The notes below the pieces were generated by a model. It saw only the letters and a list, made by a program, of their open reading frames with translations, ran no database searches and was not told where the DNA came from. From assembly GCA_040357565.1 (NCBI GenBank), contig JBDODJ010000019.1: 64,000 nucleotides of DNA; one strand, 5' to 3'. A program made the position numbers and the translations under genes. The stretch comes from Cercozoa sp. M6MM. Its lineage: Eukaryota; Protista; Endomyxa: Ascetosporea. Positions 5,384 through 23,180 of the stretch are shown here, piece after piece. Numbering within the stretch: the stretch's first letter is position 1; the number at the start of each line of letters is the position of its first letter.

Positions 5384-7652
5384 ATGTCGCAGGTGCTCGT
5401 TCTAGGCTGTGGATTGGTAGGATTCGCACTTCATCTTCCGATTCTCCAAGATTGAACTTTCTTCCGGGTGGATTCTCGTCGCACTTCTTTGCAGGTGTCG
5501 CCGCCGCTGGTGCAGTACTTGACTGCCCACGGTCACACTGTGACTGGTACAAAAGAATGATACTCATCCATTCTTGCCAAGGAGGAGTTGCATGCGTGTG
5601 CAGTGGCCACGCGCAACATTGAGTCGGAGCGTGCCAAGGCCATCCGCGCACGTATCGAGAAGAACGGGCATACCGGTACACTAGACGCAAATGAACTGAC
5701 AGCACAAAAAGTGCCTTTTAATGTCACAGATAAGCTGAAGTTCGCTGTCTTTGATGCCACAACTGATGATGCCACGGTTCGTTGCCTTTTGATTGTATTG
5801 CTCTCTGCCGTGAATGCAAGTGTGAATGCAACTTGATGCTGTAGGCCCGTTTGAACGAGCTGGTGCCGTCGAGCGACTTGGTTGTCTCGTTGCTGCCGTA
5901 TATCTACCACTGCATGGCTGCACGCGTTGCTTTGGTAGTGTTGATTCGTTTATTTCTTGTACGAGTCTGTAATTTGGGAGAAACGCAAGTTCGTTGTTGC
6001 TGCTGATAGGCGCATGAGAAGCACTTTTGCACGTCGTCCTACATCTCGGGTAACCTTTTTTTGGCTGAGTTAGTCTGTCCTGGTACTGTGTTATGGGTTT
6101 GCAGACGAGATGGCGCAGATGGACGCCGACGTCAAGTCCAAGGGCCTCGTGTTCCTCAACGAGTGCGGTAAAAAGGACTCGAGATTAAATCAGACATGTA
6201 GTTGCTATATTCTGTTGTCAGGTGTCGACCCTGGCCTCGACCACATGAGTGCCATGTCGGTGATCGACAAGGTGCACGAGGAGGGCGGCAAGGTCGTTGG
6301 CTTCTACTCCATCTGCGGTGGCCTGCCGGCACCGGACTGCAACGACAATCCGCTCGGCTACAAGCTGTCATGGGCTCCGCGTGGAGTTCTGCTTGCTTCA
6401 GTAACATTGTTCACGCTCTTTTTCGCTGCTTCTTTTATGTTGCAAACGTAGAGAAACGGCGCGACGTACTTGGAGCACGATCGGTATCGATAAAGTGAAT
6501 CGAAAGATGACGGTTTTCGAGGGTTGTTTTGTGACTTAGTGAGACCACGATCCAGCCTGGCCGTCTGTTCGACGCTGAGAACGTGCGATTCGACCAGGTG
6601 CAAGACATGGCTCTCGAGTGGTACATGAACCGCAACAGCGTGCCGTACCAAGCGCACTACGGCATTCCCGAGGCTCGCACCGTCGTTCGTGGCACCTACC
6701 GTTTCCAGGGTAGCGACTTGTTTTATTCAAACAAGGTTGTTTGCTAGTGAACAAGCTTGCTGCCTGAGCAGGTTGGTGCCAGACGCTGCGCAAGTTCGGC
6801 GATCTGAAGCTTACGTCGCTGGACACGCTACCCTTGTATCTAAAACAAGTTTGTTTGTTGCATTTCAGACAAGCATGGTTTTGGTAGCACTCAAGACATG
6901 TCCTACATGGACGCTCTTGCTCTGCTCTGGGAGTGTGAGGTAGTTTTTTTTTTTTTTGTATTCTCGCCGTTGACCCGATCACGAACAAGTTTGTTTCTGA
7001 AATAAATAGAACCCGGTGGAGTATGCCAAGTCGCAGGTCGAGACGAGCGTGTTTGAGACGCTCGAGTGGCTTGGTCTCTTTGATAATGAGGTATCTCTAA
7101 GCTTCAAGATTTTTGAGTCGTGTTGCTTAGCTCCGACAAAGTTGAATTGGGTTGAGTTGCTTTGAGTGCTTTATTTCGAGTTGCGTGCAGCGCAAAGTGC
7201 CGGCAGGCGTCGACAAGGCGCTCGATCTCGTCTGCACACTCATGTTGGTACTGTGCTTACGGTTAGTTTGTTCCGCTGGTGTTAAATATACGCATATTTG
7301 GGAGCAGGAGAAGATGCAGTACAAGGAGGGCGAACGCGACATGATCGCGTACTTCTTTATTTAGCTTTTGCTGTTAATCTATAACAAGAGTGCTGCAACA
7401 GCATGAAGCACACGTTCGAAGTGGAACGCGCCGATAACACACGCGAACTCATCTTCTCCGAGCTTGTGGTATCCTTGCTGTCTTTTCCTTGCTGTCTTTC
7501 CTCTTCTTTTTATTTTCTATCAATCCTCCCCTGGTAGTGTAAGGGCGAGCAGCACAAGGGCGGCGACAGTGCCATGGCGCGCACCGTCACTCTGCCACTC
7601 GGCGTTGCCATCCGTCTCATTCTGGAGTACTGTTGAAACTTTGCTTTGTGTT

Positions 7653-7705
<53 letters not shown>

Positions 7706-9932
7706 CGAACTCTGGTCTATCTCTGCCACACACAGAGGCAAGATCGAAGGACACGGCGTGGTGCGACCCACAAAGAAGGAGTTCTACCGTAAGTCTTTGT
7801 TTTATTCCAATTCTCCAACCCGTCTCACGTGAGTTTTCGCCATTAGAACCGATCCTGGCGGAGATGTCGAACGAGTTCGGCGTCACTTTTGTCGAAACGT
7901 ACGTTGCTTGCTACGATGAGTCCTTTTGAATTATGCGCTAGCTCCGTTCTTTCCTGCAGCAAGGAGGAGAAGACGCACTTGTGGCTTCGTGCCGAGATTA
8001 AGCCTGGCGAGGAGTATCTTCAGTTCTTCTCTTCCTTCTCCAGTTTTTCTCTTCCTTCTCCAGTTTTTCTCTTCCTTTCTCCGGATCTGTTTCAGTATTA
8101 ATCATCCATTTTTTTTTTTTTGTTCCTAACAGGCGAACGATTCTGCCGCCGGCGCAGTTGAAGAAGCTCATCGGTGATGGCGCTGATTTCCGCGTCACGG
8201 TTGAAGAATCTGCCGTAACTCTCATTTTTTATTTTTTACTCTTCCGCGCGAACGGACAATAGAGTTTGATTGGTTCAGCAATGTGCGTTCAAGAAGGAGG
8301 AATACGCAGGCTTTGACATCGTAGCGTGCTTTGTGCAGTGTAAAATGAAGTGACATTATGCTTTCGCAGGTTCCGGCAGGTTCGTGGAAGAAGGCTCCGG
8401 CCAATGCTTTCATCTTGGGACTGAAGGAACTGCCTGTATGCTGTCTCTTTGACTGGCTGGACGATTTTATTTGAATGCAAATGATGCAGGAGGGCGAGGA
8501 GTCCGATTTGTTGCACCGTCATGTGTTCTTTGCGCACTGCTTCAAGCATCAGCCAGCTGTACATAGCGTTCTCCTGACGATATAGTTGTTTGCCTGTTGT
8601 GACTTGAAGTTGTTTTCCAGTGGCGTGAGGTGTTGATGCGCTTCGCTGACTTGCGCGACGTACTTCTGCTTGTGTAAATGGTATCTACGGAAACTCACAC
8701 GAAATATTTTCGCAGAAGAAGACGCCGCGTGGTCAACTGTACGATCTCGAGTTCTTGACGGACGCGCAAGGCCGCCGTGTTGCAGCTTTCGGTCGGTACG
8801 CGTGTTTTGTAACTGTACCTGTCAAGTTTTGCTTAGGTTGCTTTTCATTTTTAGTATGGCCGGTATCACTGGAATGGCTGTCGGCATTCTCGCTTGGTGC
8901 GCGCGTCAGAAGGGCGAAGTCTTGGGCGCCTTGTCGCCTTGGCAGAACGAAGGTGTGTCAACTTTGTTGCCTTGTTCTCCGGTCATTTCGGTGCTGTTCT
9001 CAGAGGCGATGGTCGCTCATCTCAAGCGCGAACTGGAGTCAGTGCGTTGACGTTTTCCAGAACAGCTAAGTGTGTTGATTGAGTGTACATACAGGTCGGC
9101 AAGAAGCCGACGACGATTGTGATCGGAGCGCTGGGTCGCTGCGGTCAGGGTGCGCTGCACACGGCCAAGTTGGCTGGCCTCGATGTCACTCCGTGGGACA
9201 TCGCAGAGACTAAGGAACGTCCGGAAGGCCAGTTTGAGGAACTGCTGCAGCATGACATCTTCCTCAACGCCATCTTGCTGCCGCCTGGAGTCAAGTTGGC
9301 GCCGTTCCTCACCATGGAGATGCTCGAAGCCTCTTCTGACAAGGTTTGCGACTCTCCTTGCTCTTGCGTGTGTTCGAGATTTGTGACTTACTTCAAAAAC
9401 AACAGAAGCTTTCGGTCATGTGCGATGTGAGCTGCGATGCTGGCAACCCGAACAACCCTGTGCCTGTCTACCAGACTGTATGCTGTCTTTTCTCCTGTGT
9501 ATTTTTGGTGTTGTGCTGTGCCTGATGTTTGCATGCCGTGTTTGAAGGAAACGACGCTGTTTGATCCGGTGCGTCGTGTGTCTGGTGACCTTGACGTTGT
9601 TGCCATCGATCATCTGCCCTCGTTGCTGCCTCGCGTACGTTGTTTCTCTATCTTTTTATTGCTCTATTCGTGAGAGCTTTCGTTTTTTTTATTTTGTTGC
9701 TTTGAACAGGAGGCGTCGGAGCAGTTCGCCGAGGACCTGCTGCCGACGCTGCAGCAGTTGCGTGCACTCGACACTCAGAGCAACACTGTAACTCTACCCT
9801 CGTTCCTACCAGTCTCATTCGTCTTTGTTCCTTTCATGGTGCTGTTTCTCTTGACAGGAGGAGACGCCATGGACGCGCGCCCACGGCTTGTTCTTGCGCA
9901 ACTTTGCCGAAGCTGCCGCCTCTGAGGAATGA
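5384..9932 (+). CDS. LYS9-LYS1: Bifunctional saccharopine reductase (Lys9/SDH-type, N-terminal) - saccharopine dehydrogenase, lysine-forming (Lys1-type, C-terminal); ~33 exons, ~820 aa
   Basis: Lys9 motifs: MSQVLVLGCGLVS (Rossmann), DLVVSLLPY, TSSYIS, NECGVDPGLDHMSAM, FYSICGGLPAP..NPLGYKLSWAPRGVL, RGTYRF, MQYKEGERDMI, SAMARTV. Lys1 motifs: HLWLRAEIKPGE, ILGLKELP, HVFFAHCFKHQ, LYDLEFLTD..GRRVAAFG, VIGALGRCGQGA, DVSCD, AIDHLPSLLPREASEQF. The junction GAA AC|gtacgt...ctgcag|C AAG (intron 7899-7959) is in frame. Confidence 0.93.
7655..7700. repeat. (CA)n microsatellite, intronic
   Basis: CA run within the Lys9 intron at 7627-7734. Confidence 0.95.
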
Positions 9933-16888: not shown

Positions 16889-17396
16889 ACTGAACTTGAA
16901 AAAACGGCGATTCTCGTTTGTCGCTGCCAGTGAAGCTTAAAATTTACATGACGGATATGCAGATACCGATCGAATTTGGACACTTATCATGATACTAAAT
17001 CTCCATTAGTATCCCAGTCGGTCAAGTACCGTGGATTCGGTTGACAACAGACATCCTTGGAAACCTGCTGAGAATAGCAAAGAGCGATCCAGAGAGCGCA
17101 AACTCGGCTACGCACCAGGTTCTCCTGGTCCGAGGAAAGCATCTGTCGATAGACAAAGCCACCACTCATTGCAGTGGTGGCTTTAAGTCTATGTCCGTCT
17201 GTTTGTTTTGCTGAGTTATCGAGTGGAGAGACGGAAGGACATGCAGAAAACTACTTCCTTGGTTCCCATAGCCCAACAAACTTAAGTAGACAACTGAGTG
17301 TTGACTGACGTGAGTGAGAATCGCGATGCCGAAACAAACATATATCGTAGGGAAAACGAAAGTGAAATACGATACGATCCGGAACGGGGGCGGACG

Positions 17397-21026
<3,630 letters not shown>

Positions 21027-21064
21027 CCGCGCGTCTACAGACAAAAATGACAATATAATTTAAT

Positions 21065-21072
21065 TTTGGCGC
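21065..21072. promoter_or_regulatory. Putative E2F/DP binding site (TTTGGCGC) ~40 bp upstream of the CDC45 start
   Basis: Exact match to the TTTSSCGC consensus. CDC45 is a classic E2F target in plants and animals. An 8-mer can occur by chance. Confidence 0.45.
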
Positions 21073-21248
21073 TCAGAAAATCACGCTCCATCGTGAAGCA
21101 ACGAAAGTTGCACAGACGACAAACAGTGAGTCAACGATCGAAAGGTTGCCCCAGGGCACTGCGTGCACGCGCGTCGGCACCCTCTGGGCCAGTATTCTGC
21201 AGAAAAAGTGTCCAATACCGTCGATCGCGAGCTGTTGAGCGCGCTAGT

Positions 21249-23180
21249 ATGTCGATAAGTACACGAGCACGCGAGGGATCGAGCGTTTTAGTGCTCTTGT
21301 GTGCCAAAAGTTCACGTGGCTACAAATAACTTGATTCAGCTAACTCTCGTTCCAGCACCGCACAGTGGTCCCGCAGCTGTGCTCTGCCAGCGGTGTGAGG
21401 TTTAACAAATGTTCTATCTTCCAGGATATTTGTTCCCAAAGCAGCTCGGTAATTTGTTATTTGCGGCTCATATTGATCATATTGATCGTGGGGGTGGGGT
21501 GAGTTGTTCTTGAATGATGAATGATGCTTGTGGTTTGCTCTAGGCTCGCGCATCGCGTCTGCGCCGGTGGAGGTGCGAACGCCTTGACATTGCTCCGTTG
21601 TTTTCTCGAGTTAAACGCGCAGGATGGCTTTGAAGGACGCGGCTTGCACGTGGTTGGCCGATCCTTGGCGGCCTACATGATCCACCACGCGCTGGTTCGC
21701 GGCCCTGCCTCGATCTTTGTACGTTGGTTTCAACTGTTTCTCGTTGTTAGATCCCTCTATGCACGGACAGGCGAAAGATCCTGCACTGGCCGATCAACGC
21801 CGACAAAAGCTCAGTCGAAGTCTGGTATCTGTGCGTGATCAGTGCTCAGGATACTGAGATCTGTTTCCTGTGTGTGTGCAGAACAATACGAACATGTGGT
21901 CCCTCACTGTCGGCTTTGGATCCGCCTGCACCTATGTTAGTTCTCTCATTTATATATATATATATATATATACTATACATATAATATATATATATATGTA
22001 TAGATGTATATACATGTACACAGCTTCTGTACGACATGCGACTCTGGTCGCGAATCGGAAAGAACAGATCGTGGCCAATTCGGGTAAAAACACAGCAAGT
22101 TGTGACTGAAGAGGTCGATTTATTTTGAGTGTGGGTCTCGCAGGTGGCATTCGCGAGTTTTAGTCTCGTGACGGGTGTTTTGGCCAGTGTGGCAGTGTCC
22201 CTCATGTACGAGCCATTCGGGTTTAGCGTGCTAAGTCGGCAGCTGGCCGAGTTAGATGCAGAGCATGATGATGGTACCCTACCCTCCAGGACCCTCCTTT
22301 CAGAGTACTTGATACTGAATGTAGTGTGCCCACTGAGCGCACTGTACAGAGCGACTTTGCGACAAGTGTACATGTCGGATAGAAATACAACGTTGGCGGT
22401 ACGCTCTTGTGTTTGACTAATGTTGTATTTAACTAGTGTTGTATTTGACTAATGCTGTGTTTGACTACTGCTGTGTTTGACTAATGCTGTGTTTGACTAC
22501 TGCACTGAGATAGCACTGTCAGTTGAGTTGTGTTGTTAGTTGTGTCGTTCTTTGTGCAGGAGAACAACGTGAGCAGCTCGCGCGCAGCGCTGAATCGCTT
22601 CCTGTGTCCTCTGACGCGGCCTGTCGATCTCGACATTGCTGACAGTGAGCGCGACTGCGACTTTTCCGAGCTGCCCTTCATGATCTCGCTGGCTGGTCTG
22701 CCGGGTCTCAAGGCGCTGTCGAGAGAGCGCTGGCCTCGGCAGCTCTCTTCCTCCACGGCTTGGTGTGAGGCCATGCTCGCCTCCCAGCGGATCGCCTCTG
22801 GTATATCTGGATACTGGTATATCTAGATACTGCAATATCTGGGTACTGCAATATCTGGATACTGATTTATCTGGATACTGATATATCTGGATACTGATCT
22901 GGATACTGATCTGGATACTGGTATATCTGGTGTTTTGTCCAGGCGAACTGCAGGTGCCTGGCATGACGCAGCAACAACTAGCCGACTTCAAGGCCAAGGC
23001 GCCGCTGCTGCGCCAGTTGCACATGGTACACAGGTTTCACTCTGACAGTGCCGGGTTCACACTCTGCTGTCCCAGGCCACCGTGCTGCGTCGGGTACCGC
23101 GCTCCCGTCGCTCCAGCATTCGACGCGACGCTGGTGTCGTCGCAGGCGCCGTGTTGCCCAACTTGCATCTCAACTTGTAG
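21249..23180 (+). CDS. Hypothetical multi-exon protein, divergent from CDC45
   Basis: Exons with coding-like composition bounded by GT-AG (e.g. ENNVSSSRAALNRFLCPL..., GELQVPGMTQQQLADF). Ends ...PNLHLNL-TAG. No family recognised. Confidence 0.55.

What the first reader, a model, noticed from the sequence alone, without database searches (positions are those of the whole stretch)
5384..9932. In-frame Lys9-Lys1 fusion with domain order reversed relative to animal/plant LKR-SDH
Seen: a complete saccharopine reductase domain runs through a normal intron (7899-7959; ...FVET|KEEKTHLWLRAE...) into a complete Lys1-type domain, with no stop, no new ATG and a linker of only a few residues. Known: fungi encode Lys9 and Lys1 separately for the last two steps of alpha-aminoadipate lysine synthesis; animal/plant AASS is fused LKR(N)-SDH(C) and is catabolic; basidiomycetes fuse Lys9 to spermidine synthase. 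Here the second domain has fungal Lys1 signatures (LWLRAE.KP.E, LYDLEFL, AIDHLPSLLPRE), the order follows the biosynthetic direction, and no transit peptide precedes the Rossmann motif. Inference: an independently evolved cytosolic bifunctional enzyme that may channel saccharopine, implying a fungal-type lysine pathway in a protist. I do not know of this architecture being described, but cannot search.
Basis: partly seen in the sequence, partly recalled or inferred. Interest (0 to 1): 0.85.

Follow-up and report, generated by a model that had tools for sequence, protein, structure and literature searches.

The report
Fused saccharopine reductase–dehydrogenase (Lys9–Lys1) gene
A marine rhizarian amoeba really does encode the last two enzymes of the fungal-type lysine pathway (Lys9, then Lys1) as one protein. 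The same fusion is conserved across Rhizaria and some green algae and sits unstudied in public databases, and it is still open whether it makes or breaks down lysine.

Summary
Window 5384-9932 (+) is one 33-exon, all GT-AG gene. Its 820-aa product is identical to GenBank protein MHM6MM_001322, a 'hypothetical protein' of Cercozoa sp. M6MM (= Lemnamoeba sinaloensis, Rhizaria). Intron 7899-7959 joins a complete Lys9-type saccharopine reductase in frame to a complete Lys1-type saccharopine dehydrogenase.

The C-terminal half matches yeast Lys1 at 291 bits but the human AASS LKR domain at only 37 bits. It is therefore not a permuted AASS.

The fusion is not unique. About 40 protein clusters share the architecture and the same short linker: chlorarachniophytes, Paulinella, Mataza, Leptophrys, a foraminiferan, Lapot, the green alga Chloroparvula and unnamed metagenome sequences, several of them complete transcript ORFs. 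Both domain trees place the fusions in one clade next to stand-alone euglenozoan enzymes. I found no paper describing the fusion.

The 'fungal-type lysine pathway' reading is not supported. No homocitrate synthase or clear aminoadipate reductase was found, though six-frame searches are weak on these tiny exons. The genome also carries a separate AASS-type LKR-SDH gene.

My best reading is a terminal or salvage module running aminoadipate semialdehyde to lysine (about 45%). The main rival is a second catabolic route (about 33%). No RNA reads could be obtained.

The parts
5384..9932 (+). Whole coding region of the Lys9-Lys1 fusion gene (33 exons, 820 aa; GenBank MHM6MM_001322)
   Evidence: Exons: 5384-5416, 5495-5546, 5604-5675, 5730-5776, 5845-5934, 6010-6049, 6105-6167, 6222-6400, 6452-6483, 6540-6709, 6772-6835, 6888-6939, 7010-7090, 7191-7247, 7308-7348, 7402-7468, 7538-7626, 7736-7788, 7847-7898, 7960-8013, 8133-8214, 8279-8320, 8370-8435, 8490-8558, 8621-8659, 8716-8795, 8855-8952, 9004-9041, 9095-9343, 9406-9477, 9548-9634, 9710-9787, 9858-9932. 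All introns are GT-AG. The translation is identical to P0197.
5384..7898 (+). Exons 1-19: saccharopine reductase (Lys9-type) half, residues 1 to about 445
   Evidence: Pfam Sacchrp_dh_NADP and Sacchrp_dh_C. Residues 3-442 align with residues 5-444 of Magnaporthe saccharopine reductase 1E5L/1E5Q at 299 bits. The end of Rossmann strand 2 reads VTVATRN against VTVACRT in that NADPH enzyme.
7899..7959 (+). Junction intron (61 nt, phase 2) that joins the two halves in frame
   Evidence: GTACGTTG...CTGCAG; length and donor are typical of this gene's other introns. It contains a TGA at 7927-7929 in the upstream frame and an ATG at 7916 in the downstream frame. Its removal gives a linker with the same length as in 15 aligned homologues.
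7960..9932 (+). Exons 20-33: saccharopine dehydrogenase (Lys1-type, L-lysine-forming) half, residues about 446-820, plus the stop codon
   Evidence: Pfam AlaDh_PNT_N and AlaDh_PNT_C. Residues 451-815 align with the whole of yeast Lys1 (2QRJ, 2Q99, 3UGK) at 287-291 bits, against 33-37 bits to the human AASS LKR domain. The motifs LRAE.KP.E.R, GLKE, FAHC.K, DLEFL, GRRVAAFG, WD..ET and IDHLPSLLPREAS are all kept.
5676..5729 (+). Small 54-nt intron inside what could also be read as one long exon 3 (an 18-aa difference)
   Evidence: GT-AG. It is removed in the GenBank model. Removing it fits the family alignment better, since this stretch is already an insertion relative to the homologues. No RNA evidence was obtained here.
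7305..7307 (+). NAGNAG acceptor: the exon may start at 7305 (adds one Gln) or at 7308 (GenBank model)
7627..7735 (+). Intron holding a (CA)n microsatellite

Best explanation
Shown: window 5384-9932 is one gene for an 820-aa two-enzyme protein. The N-terminal half is a Lys9-type saccharopine reductase, which interconverts 2-aminoadipate 6-semialdehyde (AASA) + glutamate + NADPH with saccharopine. It is joined by a linker of about 6-10 residues to a Lys1-type saccharopine dehydrogenase, which interconverts saccharopine + NAD+ with lysine + 2-oxoglutarate + NADH. The protein belongs to an old, conserved eukaryotic fusion family (Rhizaria, a green alga, unnamed metagenome sequences). That family arose once from stand-alone Lys9 and Lys1 genes, independently of animal/plant AASS.

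Inferred: the protein is cytosolic and works mainly in the direction AASA to saccharopine to lysine. It would act as a terminal or salvage module, with AASA/piperideine-6-carboxylate coming from pipecolate, aminoadipate or similar sources, rather than as part of a complete de novo aminoadipate pathway. The separate AASS-type LKR-SDH gene of the same genome would handle lysine breakdown. The fusion keeps the two activities in 1:1 ratio and may pass saccharopine from one site to the other; this is not tested.
For: Gene and fusion:
- The 33-exon GT-AG model is identical to GenBank protein P0197.
- It is colinear end to end with P0038, P0130, P0070 and P0096 at 35-44% identity.
- A 16-sequence alignment has a gap-poor linker.
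- Complete transcript ORFs with the same architecture come from Chlorarachnion, Gymnochlora, Lotharella, Mataza, Leptophrys, Lapot, Paulinella and Chloroparvula.

Enzyme identity:
- Pfam domains.
- 299 bits to the Magnaporthe saccharopine reductase structure and 291 bits to the yeast Lys1 structure, each over the full length.

Single origin:
- In the Lys9-domain tree the fusions fall in a 31-row clade with SH-aLRT 97, next to a clade that holds Euglena's stand-alone enzyme.
- In the Lys1-domain tree all fusions fall in one 36-row clade with SH-aLRT 89, next to Diplonema's stand-alone Lys1 and then fungal Lys1.

Direction (inference):
- The Lys9 half keeps the A-x-R-T/N end of strand 2 seen in the NADPH-dependent fungal enzyme, and the Lys1 half keeps the W-D of the NAD+ enzyme.
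- The genome's other saccharopine gene (C53) has LKR-type exons followed by SDH exons. Its strand-2 end, VTIVSDD, resembles human AASS ITVGSD, the catabolic NAD+ type.
- Two differently wired modules in one genome are easier to explain if they run in opposite directions.
Against:
- Upstream aminoadipate-pathway genes were not found. Homocitrate synthase gave no hit, and the only HMGL-like gene looks like HMG-CoA lyase. The only TIGR03443 (aminoadipate reductase) hit is a generic adenylation-thiolation-reductase gene at 31.8 bits. The source of AASA is therefore unknown.
- The fusion also occurs in phototrophs that, from general knowledge, make lysine by the diaminopimelate route, so it cannot be essential for de novo synthesis there.
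- The A-S/T-R-T motif is also present in archaeal and bacterial Lys9-like genes that sit next to LKR-type genes, so it does not by itself mark an anabolic enzyme.
- From general enzymology, the Lys1 reaction is reversible and its equilibrium favours saccharopine.
- A bacterivore has ample dietary lysine.
Confidence: 0.45

Rival explanations
1. The same fused enzyme works in the catabolic direction. Lysine + 2-oxoglutarate go to saccharopine on the Lys1 half, and saccharopine goes to aminoadipate semialdehyde + glutamate on the Lys9 half. This would be a second, probably cytosolic, saccharopine route beside the AASS-type enzyme.
For: - No upstream aminoadipate-pathway genes were found.
- The fusion is kept in phototrophs and in phagotrophs alike, and all of them need lysine breakdown.
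- Prokaryotic Lys9-like genes with the same cofactor motif sit in LKR-SDH gene pairs.
- From general knowledge, the Lys1 equilibrium favours saccharopine formation.
Against: - The genome already has an AASS-type LKR-SDH gene with an NAD-type SDH motif, so a second catabolic enzyme would be redundant.
- A strictly NADP-dependent oxidation of saccharopine is unfavourable in a reduced NADPH pool (inference).
- Both halves group with enzymes of organisms that use the pathway anabolically, namely fungi and Euglena.
Confidence: 0.33
2. One reading: the fusion is the end of a complete fungal-type alpha-aminoadipate pathway that makes lysine de novo in this amoeba.
For: - Lys9-type and Lys1-type identity of both halves.
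- The sister position to euglenozoan enzymes.
- DapA and DapF were not found, so there is no complete diaminopimelate route either.
- One adenylation-thiolation-reductase gene exists on C577.
- Six-frame searches are weak on this genome's tiny exons: PF05222 missed the window's own Lys1 half.
Against: - TIGR02146 gave no hit, and PF00682 found only an HMG-CoA-lyase-like gene.
- The C577 reductase domain scores 62.6 bits with the generic thioester-reductase model but only 31.8 bits with the aminoadipate reductase model, and its adenylation exon looks like an acyl-CoA ligase.
- The organism eats bacteria.
Confidence: 0.1
3. The two halves have drifted to other substrates, for example another opine-type or amino-acid-aldehyde condensation. 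The protein would then no longer be a saccharopine enzyme.
For: No enzymology exists for any member of the fusion family. No paper was found.
Against: Full-length matches near 290-300 bits to both characterised enzymes, with the Lys1 substrate and catalytic motifs invariant in 16 aligned members.
Confidence: 0.07
4. There are two separate genes. Intron 7899-7959 is not removed: Lys9 ends at the TGA at 7927-7929, and Lys1 starts at the ATG at 7916.
For: Both signals exist in the DNA. No RNA reads were available.
Against: - The two ORFs would overlap.
- The intron is typical in length and in both splice sites.
- GenBank's model splices it.
- The linker length matches all homologues, including transcript-derived complete ORFs.
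Confidence: 0.03

Closest known systems
Fungal Lys9 (saccharopine reductase, EC 1.5.1.10; structures 1E5Q, 2AXQ) and Lys1 (saccharopine dehydrogenase, L-lysine-forming, EC 1.5.1.7; structures 2Q99, 3UGK)
   Same: Both halves align over their full length with these enzymes at 266-299 bits, with the same Pfam domains, cofactor-end motifs and Lys1 active-site motifs.
   Different: In fungi they are two separate genes. Here, and in about 40 related clusters, they are one polypeptide with a very short linker. No upstream aminoadipate-pathway genes were found in this genome.
Animal/plant AASS (bifunctional LKR-SDH, catabolic)
   Same: It is a two-enzyme protein covering the same two reactions around saccharopine. 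Its SDH half is homologous to the Lys9 half here (236 bits).
   Different: The domain order is opposite. The lysine-side domain of AASS is a roughly 450-aa LKR type that matches the window's Lys1 half only weakly (33-37 bits). AASS SDH has an acidic (NAD-type) strand-2 end, where the window has A-T-R-N. The genome has its own AASS-type gene elsewhere, on C53.
Uncharacterised Lys9-Lys1 fusion proteins in public databases (for example UniRef 'Saccharopine dehydrogenase [NAD(+), L-lysine-forming]' of Lotharella globosa, P0196; EukProt/MMETSP ORFs of Paulinella, Mataza, Leptophrys, Nonionella, Lapot and Chloroparvula)
   Same: Same architecture, same linker, 38-49% identity to P0197 in the 16-sequence alignment, and one clade in both domain trees.
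   Different: None in kind; the window's gene is one more member. None of them has been studied as far as the paper library shows.
Basidiomycete spermidine synthase-Lys9 fusion (PMC10051792)
   Same: Lys9 is fused to another enzyme.
   Different: The partner is spermidine synthase, it sits at the N-terminus, and it is not a consecutive step in the pathway.
Prokaryotic LKR + SDH gene pairs and fusions (Thor-, Hermod- and Promethearchaeota, Ignavibacteria and others; Thermoplasmata P0255, fused)
   Same: The Lys9-like partner is up to 48% identical to the window's Lys9 half.
   Different: The order is LKR first, and the partner is LKR-type, only 24.5% identical to the window's Lys1 half.

Membership tests
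Saccharopine reductase (Lys9 type, EC 1.5.1.10) | Sacchrp_dh_NADP Rossmann domain followed by Sacchrp_dh_C, full length about 450 aa | tested here: met
   Pfam 4-128 and 133-439. Residues 3-442 align with residues 5-444 of 1E5L at 299 bits.
Saccharopine reductase (Lys9 type, EC 1.5.1.10) | NADPH-type end of strand 2 (A-C-R-T in the Magnaporthe enzyme) rather than an acidic residue | tested here: met
   VTVATRN aligns with VTVACRT. R32 is nearly invariant in 16 fusions. Cofactor use itself was not measured.
Saccharopine dehydrogenase, L-lysine-forming (Lys1 type, EC 1.5.1.7) | AlaDh_PNT N and C domains in a protein of about 370 aa that aligns end to end with yeast Lys1 | tested here: met
   Pfam 453-593 and 674-794. 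Residues 451-815 align with residues 26-388 of 2QRJ at 291 bits.
Saccharopine dehydrogenase, L-lysine-forming (Lys1 type, EC 1.5.1.7) | Catalytic Lys in GLKE and His in FAHC (Lys77 and His96 of yeast Lys1; numbering from memory), substrate Arg residues, and the NAD-type W-D | tested here: met
   All are aligned and identical. K523, H542, R455, R583, W668 and D669 are invariant in 16 fusions.
AASS (LKR-SDH bifunctional enzyme of animals and plants) | Order LKR (N-terminal) then SDH (C-terminal) | tested here: not met
   The order here is SDH/Lys9 type first, then the lysine-side domain.
AASS (LKR-SDH bifunctional enzyme of animals and plants) | Lysine-side domain of the LKR type (about 450 aa) | tested here: not met
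   33-37 bits, partial, to human LKR structures 8DDA and 8E8T, against 291 bits to Lys1.
Conserved eukaryotic Lys9-Lys1 fusion family (uncharacterised) | Colinear over both halves with a short, fixed-length linker; falls in the fusion clade in both domain trees | tested here: met
   clade support 89; clade support 97.
Complete alpha-aminoadipate lysine pathway | Homocitrate synthase present | tested here: not met
   TIGR02146 gave no hit. PF00682 hit only C227, an HMG-CoA-lyase-like gene. Sensitivity is limited by the tiny exons and the draft assembly.
Complete alpha-aminoadipate lysine pathway | Aminoadipate reductase (Lys2) present | tested here: inconclusive
   One adenylation-thiolation-reductase gene lies on C577. 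TIGR03443 scores only 31.8 bits against 62.6 bits for the generic thioester reductase model.
Complete alpha-aminoadipate lysine pathway | Homoaconitase, homoisocitrate dehydrogenase, aminoadipate aminotransferase, Lys5 | not tested
   Not searched. Family models would cross-hit aconitase, isocitrate dehydrogenase and similar paralogues exon by exon.
Single transcript across the junction | RNA reads or cDNA spanning 7898/7960 in this organism | not testable with these tools
Only orthologous transcript ORFs support the single transcript.

The most novel reading that the evidence does not exclude
Rhizaria, and some green algae, keep a dedicated anabolic saccharopine module: a fused, possibly channelling Lys9-Lys1 enzyme inherited from an ancient eukaryotic aminoadipate pathway. 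It would run beside a catabolic AASS-type enzyme, so that aminoadipate-type lysine synthesis or salvage exists outside fungi and euglenozoans.
Probability: 0.3. Interest if true: 0.65.

Novelty: new variant of a known kind. Interest (0 to 1): 0.45.

Why it matters
Textbooks place Lys9 and Lys1 as separate fungal (and euglenid) biosynthetic enzymes, and LKR-SDH (AASS) as the only fused saccharopine enzyme. This gene shows a second, independently built two-enzyme protein around saccharopine. It has the opposite order and a different lysine-side domain, and it is conserved across a whole eukaryotic supergroup and beyond.

In this genome it coexists with an AASS-type gene. That makes a clean test case for how cells separate lysine synthesis or salvage from lysine breakdown, and for whether fusing consecutive enzymes serves channelling.

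It also bears on how widely remnants of the aminoadipate pathway survive in eukaryotes. KEGG-style reconstructions would count this single protein as two 'lysine biosynthesis' steps. The practical limit is that the architecture is already in databases and nothing here shows function.

Tried and rejected
- Prokaryotic origin of the fusion: a scan of 185,579 species genomes gave 80 loci whose match appeared to span residues 1 to about 800. Four loci were inspected: Thorarchaeota L017 and L064, Vulcanimicrobiota L062 and Ignavibacteriaceae L070. Each shows two adjacent open reading frames of about 430-460 aa. Pfam on L017 and L064 gives LKR-type first and Lys9-type second, so these are not Lys9-Lys1 fusions.
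- My first model kept exon 3 as one piece (839 aa). I rejected it in favour of the 820-aa model with intron 5676-5729.
- The exon 10/11 join first seemed to have no in-frame GT-AG solution. It was solved with acceptor 6887/6888 and confirmed by identity to P0197. A brute-force exon-chain search timed out.
- P0236 (Planoprotostelium, 923 aa) was taken for an AASS-type reference, but its N-terminus is not LKR. It was not used as such.
- The ESM Atlas look-up of the C577 reductase domain gave only generic NAD_binding_4 clusters.
- PF05222 found nothing in the whole genome, not even the window's own Lys1 half. This shows that negative six-frame results here are weak evidence.
- Joined-model step: my own joined protein was sent to no search, family, fold or structure tool. 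Database searches used single exons by reference and the database protein P0197.

Full report
ORGANISM AND GENE MODEL

An earlier follow-up note of this scan named the genome as Lemnamoeba sinaloensis strain M6MM. The paper library confirms this: a rhizarian (Apofilosa) amoeba, first sequenced as 'Cercozoa sp. M6MM', with on average 13 introns of 82 bp per gene and 99.5% GT/AG splice sites.

I read the region, translated it in three frames and built an exon chain by hand. The final model has 33 exons between the ATG at 5384 and the TGA at 9930-9932. All 32 introns are GT-AG and 49-119 nt long, with a GTA-rich donor. Its translation (820 aa) is identical to protein P0197, GenBank MHM6MM_001322, 'hypothetical protein [Cercozoa sp. 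M6MM]', which a homology search returned. The fused model is therefore already in the public annotation, unnamed.

My first model differed from P0197 in two places only. It lacked a 54-nt intron at 5676-5729, and it used the other site of a NAGNAG acceptor at 7305/7308.

THE JUNCTION

Intron 7899-7959 is 61 nt (GTACGTTG...CTGCAG). Its donor octamer recurs at intron 9635-9709 of the same gene.

An ATG at 7916 inside the intron is in the Lys1 frame, and with the intron retained the Lys9 frame would stop at 7927-7929. I reject the two-gene reading on comparative grounds:
- The spliced protein is colinear from residue 3 to the end with 824-957-aa homologues.
- In a 16-sequence alignment the linker between the last Lys9 helix and the 'W/H-L-R-x-E' start of Lys1 has essentially no gaps.

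WHAT THE TWO HALVES ARE

Pfam finds Sacchrp_dh_NADP (4-128), Sacchrp_dh_C (133-439), AlaDh_PNT_N (453-593) and AlaDh_PNT_C (674-794). Single exons given by reference already showed the Sacchrp_dh_C part.

Against solved structures:
- The N-terminal half aligns over its full length with Magnaporthe saccharopine reductase (299 bits), yeast Lys9 (266 bits) and the human AASS SDH domain (236 bits).
- The C-terminal half aligns over its full length with yeast Lys1 (287-291 bits) but only partially, at 33-37 bits, with the human AASS LKR domain.

The Lys1 motifs that carry the catalytic Lys and His, the substrate arginines and the NAD-type W-D are invariant in the family. The yeast residue numbers I give for them are from memory. 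The Lys9 half has A-T-R-N where the NADPH-dependent fungal enzyme has A-C-R-T.

THE FUSION IS A FAMILY, NOT A ONE-OFF

A full-library HMMER search with the 83-aa exon 9095-9343 found proteins of 824-957 aa that matched at positions 644-815 rather than near 200. Pfam showed these to be Lys9-then-Lys1.

A homology search with one of them gave about 40 clusters with this architecture. Those that carry names are:
- Lotharella globosa (UniRef, auto-named), Gymnochlora and Chlorarachnion;
- Paulinella micropora and P. chromatophora;
- Mataza, Leptophrys vorax, the foraminiferan Nonionella stella and Lapot gusevi;
- the green alga Chloroparvula japonica.

Many of these are complete ORFs from transcriptome assemblies, which shows single mRNAs in relatives. 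Unnamed members lie on metagenome contigs of up to 247 kb.

In quick maximum-likelihood trees:
- The Lys9 halves of the fusions form a clade of 31 rows (SH-aLRT 97). One unnamed fusion, P0199, falls outside it on open (unsupported) forks. The clade lies next to one that contains Euglena's stand-alone enzyme.
- The Lys1 halves all lie in one 36-row clade (SH-aLRT 89) next to Diplonema's stand-alone Lys1 and then fungal Lys1.

Several short 'stand-alone' rows inside these clades are fragments that extend into the other domain. Congruent placement of both halves, together with the fixed linker, indicates one ancient fusion of Lys9 and Lys1 genes. These are quick trees without bootstraps and deep nodes are open, so I claim no donor or direction of spread between Rhizaria and green algae.

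PROKARYOTES

A scan of one genome per prokaryotic species returned 80 loci, many in Thor-, Hermod- and Promethearchaeota and some in bacteria, whose match seemed to span both halves. I inspected four: L017, L064, L062 and L070. Each shows two adjacent ORFs of about 430-460 aa. Pfam on L017 and L064 gives an LKR-type AlaDh_PNT protein first and a Lys9-like protein second, which is the AASS order and not a Lys9-Lys1 fusion. The Thorarchaeota Lys9-like protein is 48% identical to the window's Lys9 half, while its LKR-type neighbour is only 24.5% identical to the Lys1 half.

PATHWAY CONTEXT IN THIS GENOME

These were six-frame searches of the 23.6-Mb draft.
- A second Sacchrp_dh_C locus lies on contig C53. 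Its open segments and a local tblastn with the Thorarchaeota pair show LKR-type exons (about 17233-19432) followed on the same strand by SDH exons (about 19534-21814). One exon hits the C-terminal part of the human AASS LKR structure. The SDH Rossmann strand-2 end reads VTIVSDD, like human ITVGSD. The genome therefore also has an AASS-type gene. Its fusion into one ORF is likely but not proven here.
- Homocitrate synthase: none. The only HMGL-like gene, on C227, carries the VEVGPRDGLQNE motif that I recognise as HMG-CoA lyase.
- Aminoadipate reductase: the single TIGR03443 hit (30.7-31.8 bits) is the reductase exon of an adenylation-thiolation-reductase gene on C577. That exon scores higher with the generic thioester-reductase model (62.6 bits), and the gene's adenylation exon resembles acyl-CoA ligases.
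- Diaminopimelate route: a clear LysA exon (92-94 bits) lies on C1141, but no DapA or DapF was found.

These negatives are weak. PF05222 found nothing in the whole genome although the window encodes that domain, because exons here average about 75 nt.

MECHANISM

Shown: one polypeptide with two complete enzymes whose motifs are intact, catalysing the two consecutive reversible reactions around saccharopine.

Inferred: its direction. Three things favour AASA to lysine:
- both halves are of the type used anabolically in fungi and Euglena;
- the cofactor-end motifs are NADPH-type on the reductase half and NAD-type on the Lys1 half;
- a differently wired AASS-type gene is present in the same genome.

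Against it:
- no source of AASA was identified;
- the same motif occurs in prokaryotic Lys9-like genes paired with LKR-type genes;
- the fusion is kept in phototrophs that do not need it for synthesis;
- prey supplies lysine.

I therefore put a terminal or salvage (anabolic) role at about 45%, a second catabolic route at about 33%, a complete aminoadipate pathway at about 10%, altered substrates at about 7%, and a mis-joined pair of genes at about 3%. Channelling is only a possibility suggested by the short, conserved linker.

NOVELTY

Paper searches for saccharopine together with fusion, Rhizaria, Bigelowiella, Paulinella and related terms found only the basidiomycete spermidine synthase-Lys9 fusion (PMC10051792) and general surveys. 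None describes a Lys9-Lys1 fusion. The library lacks most subscription journals, so this is absence in that library only.

The architecture itself is in GenBank, UniRef, EukProt and MMETSP as auto-named or unnamed predictions. I rate it a new variant of a known kind (bifunctional saccharopine enzymes). The window's gene is an ordinary member of an undescribed but database-visible family.

LIMITS

- No RNA reads were obtained.
- All trees are quick searches.
- Residue roles and equilibrium arguments rest on general knowledge.
- My own joined protein was sent to no search, family, fold or structure tool. Database searches used exons by reference and the database protein P0197. Exons were joined only inside scripts, to check the frame, to compare with P0197 and, for one local blastp against proteins already fetched.

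Noticed in passing
G000:C53:17233-21814 (+) (locus L016): A second saccharopine gene of the AASS type. LKR-like exons are followed by SDH-like exons on one strand, and the SDH Rossmann strand-2 end is VTIVSDD (NAD type, like human AASS). This genome therefore carries both kinds of two-enzyme saccharopine gene.
   Followed up: partly
G000:C1141:3950-4324 (-) (loci L010, L014): One long exon matches diaminopimelate decarboxylase LysA at 92-94 bits, while DapA and DapF were not found. This may be salvage of bacterial diaminopimelate to lysine by a bacterivore. The contig ends inside the gene.
   Followed up: partly
G000:C577:4741-7750 (+) (locus L013): A gene with adenylation (TSGTTGLPKG), carrier (GADS) and thioester-reductase (GATGFVG) parts. 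It has the Lys2-like architecture but scores only 31.8 bits with the aminoadipate reductase model. Its substrate is unknown.
   Followed up: partly
G000:C227:16194-18350 (-) (locus L015): The only HMGL-like gene found. Its motif VEVGPRDGLQNE points to HMG-CoA lyase. No homocitrate or isopropylmalate synthase was detected.
   Followed up: partly
L017:7653-10309 and L064:7764-10398 (Thorarchaeota); similar in many of L018-L096: Asgard archaea (Thor-, Hermod- and Promethearchaeota) and several bacterial phyla carry adjacent LKR-type and Lys9-type genes in the AASS order. The Thorarchaeota Lys9-like protein is 48% identical to the window's Lys9 half.
   Followed up: partly
Proteins P0255, P0084, P0219: Other fusions of the same parts. 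P0255 (Thermoplasmata, 911 aa) is LKR(N)-SDH(C) in one protein. P0084 (750 aa, metagenome) is Lys1-type(N)-Lys9(C). P0219 (1368 aa, metagenome) is Lys9-like fused to a 2-oxoacid dehydrogenase E1.
   Followed up: no
window 7627-7735 and 8014-8132: Two introns of the gene hold simple repeats: a (CA)n run of about 45 nt, and a 24-nt motif (TTCTCTTCCTTCTCCAGTTTTTC-like) repeated about 2.5 times followed by a T13 run.
   Followed up: no
whole genome G000: The Pfam model PF05222 found no match in a six-frame search although the window encodes that domain. Negative family searches on this intron-dense genome (exons of about 75 nt) should not be read as absence.
   Followed up: yes
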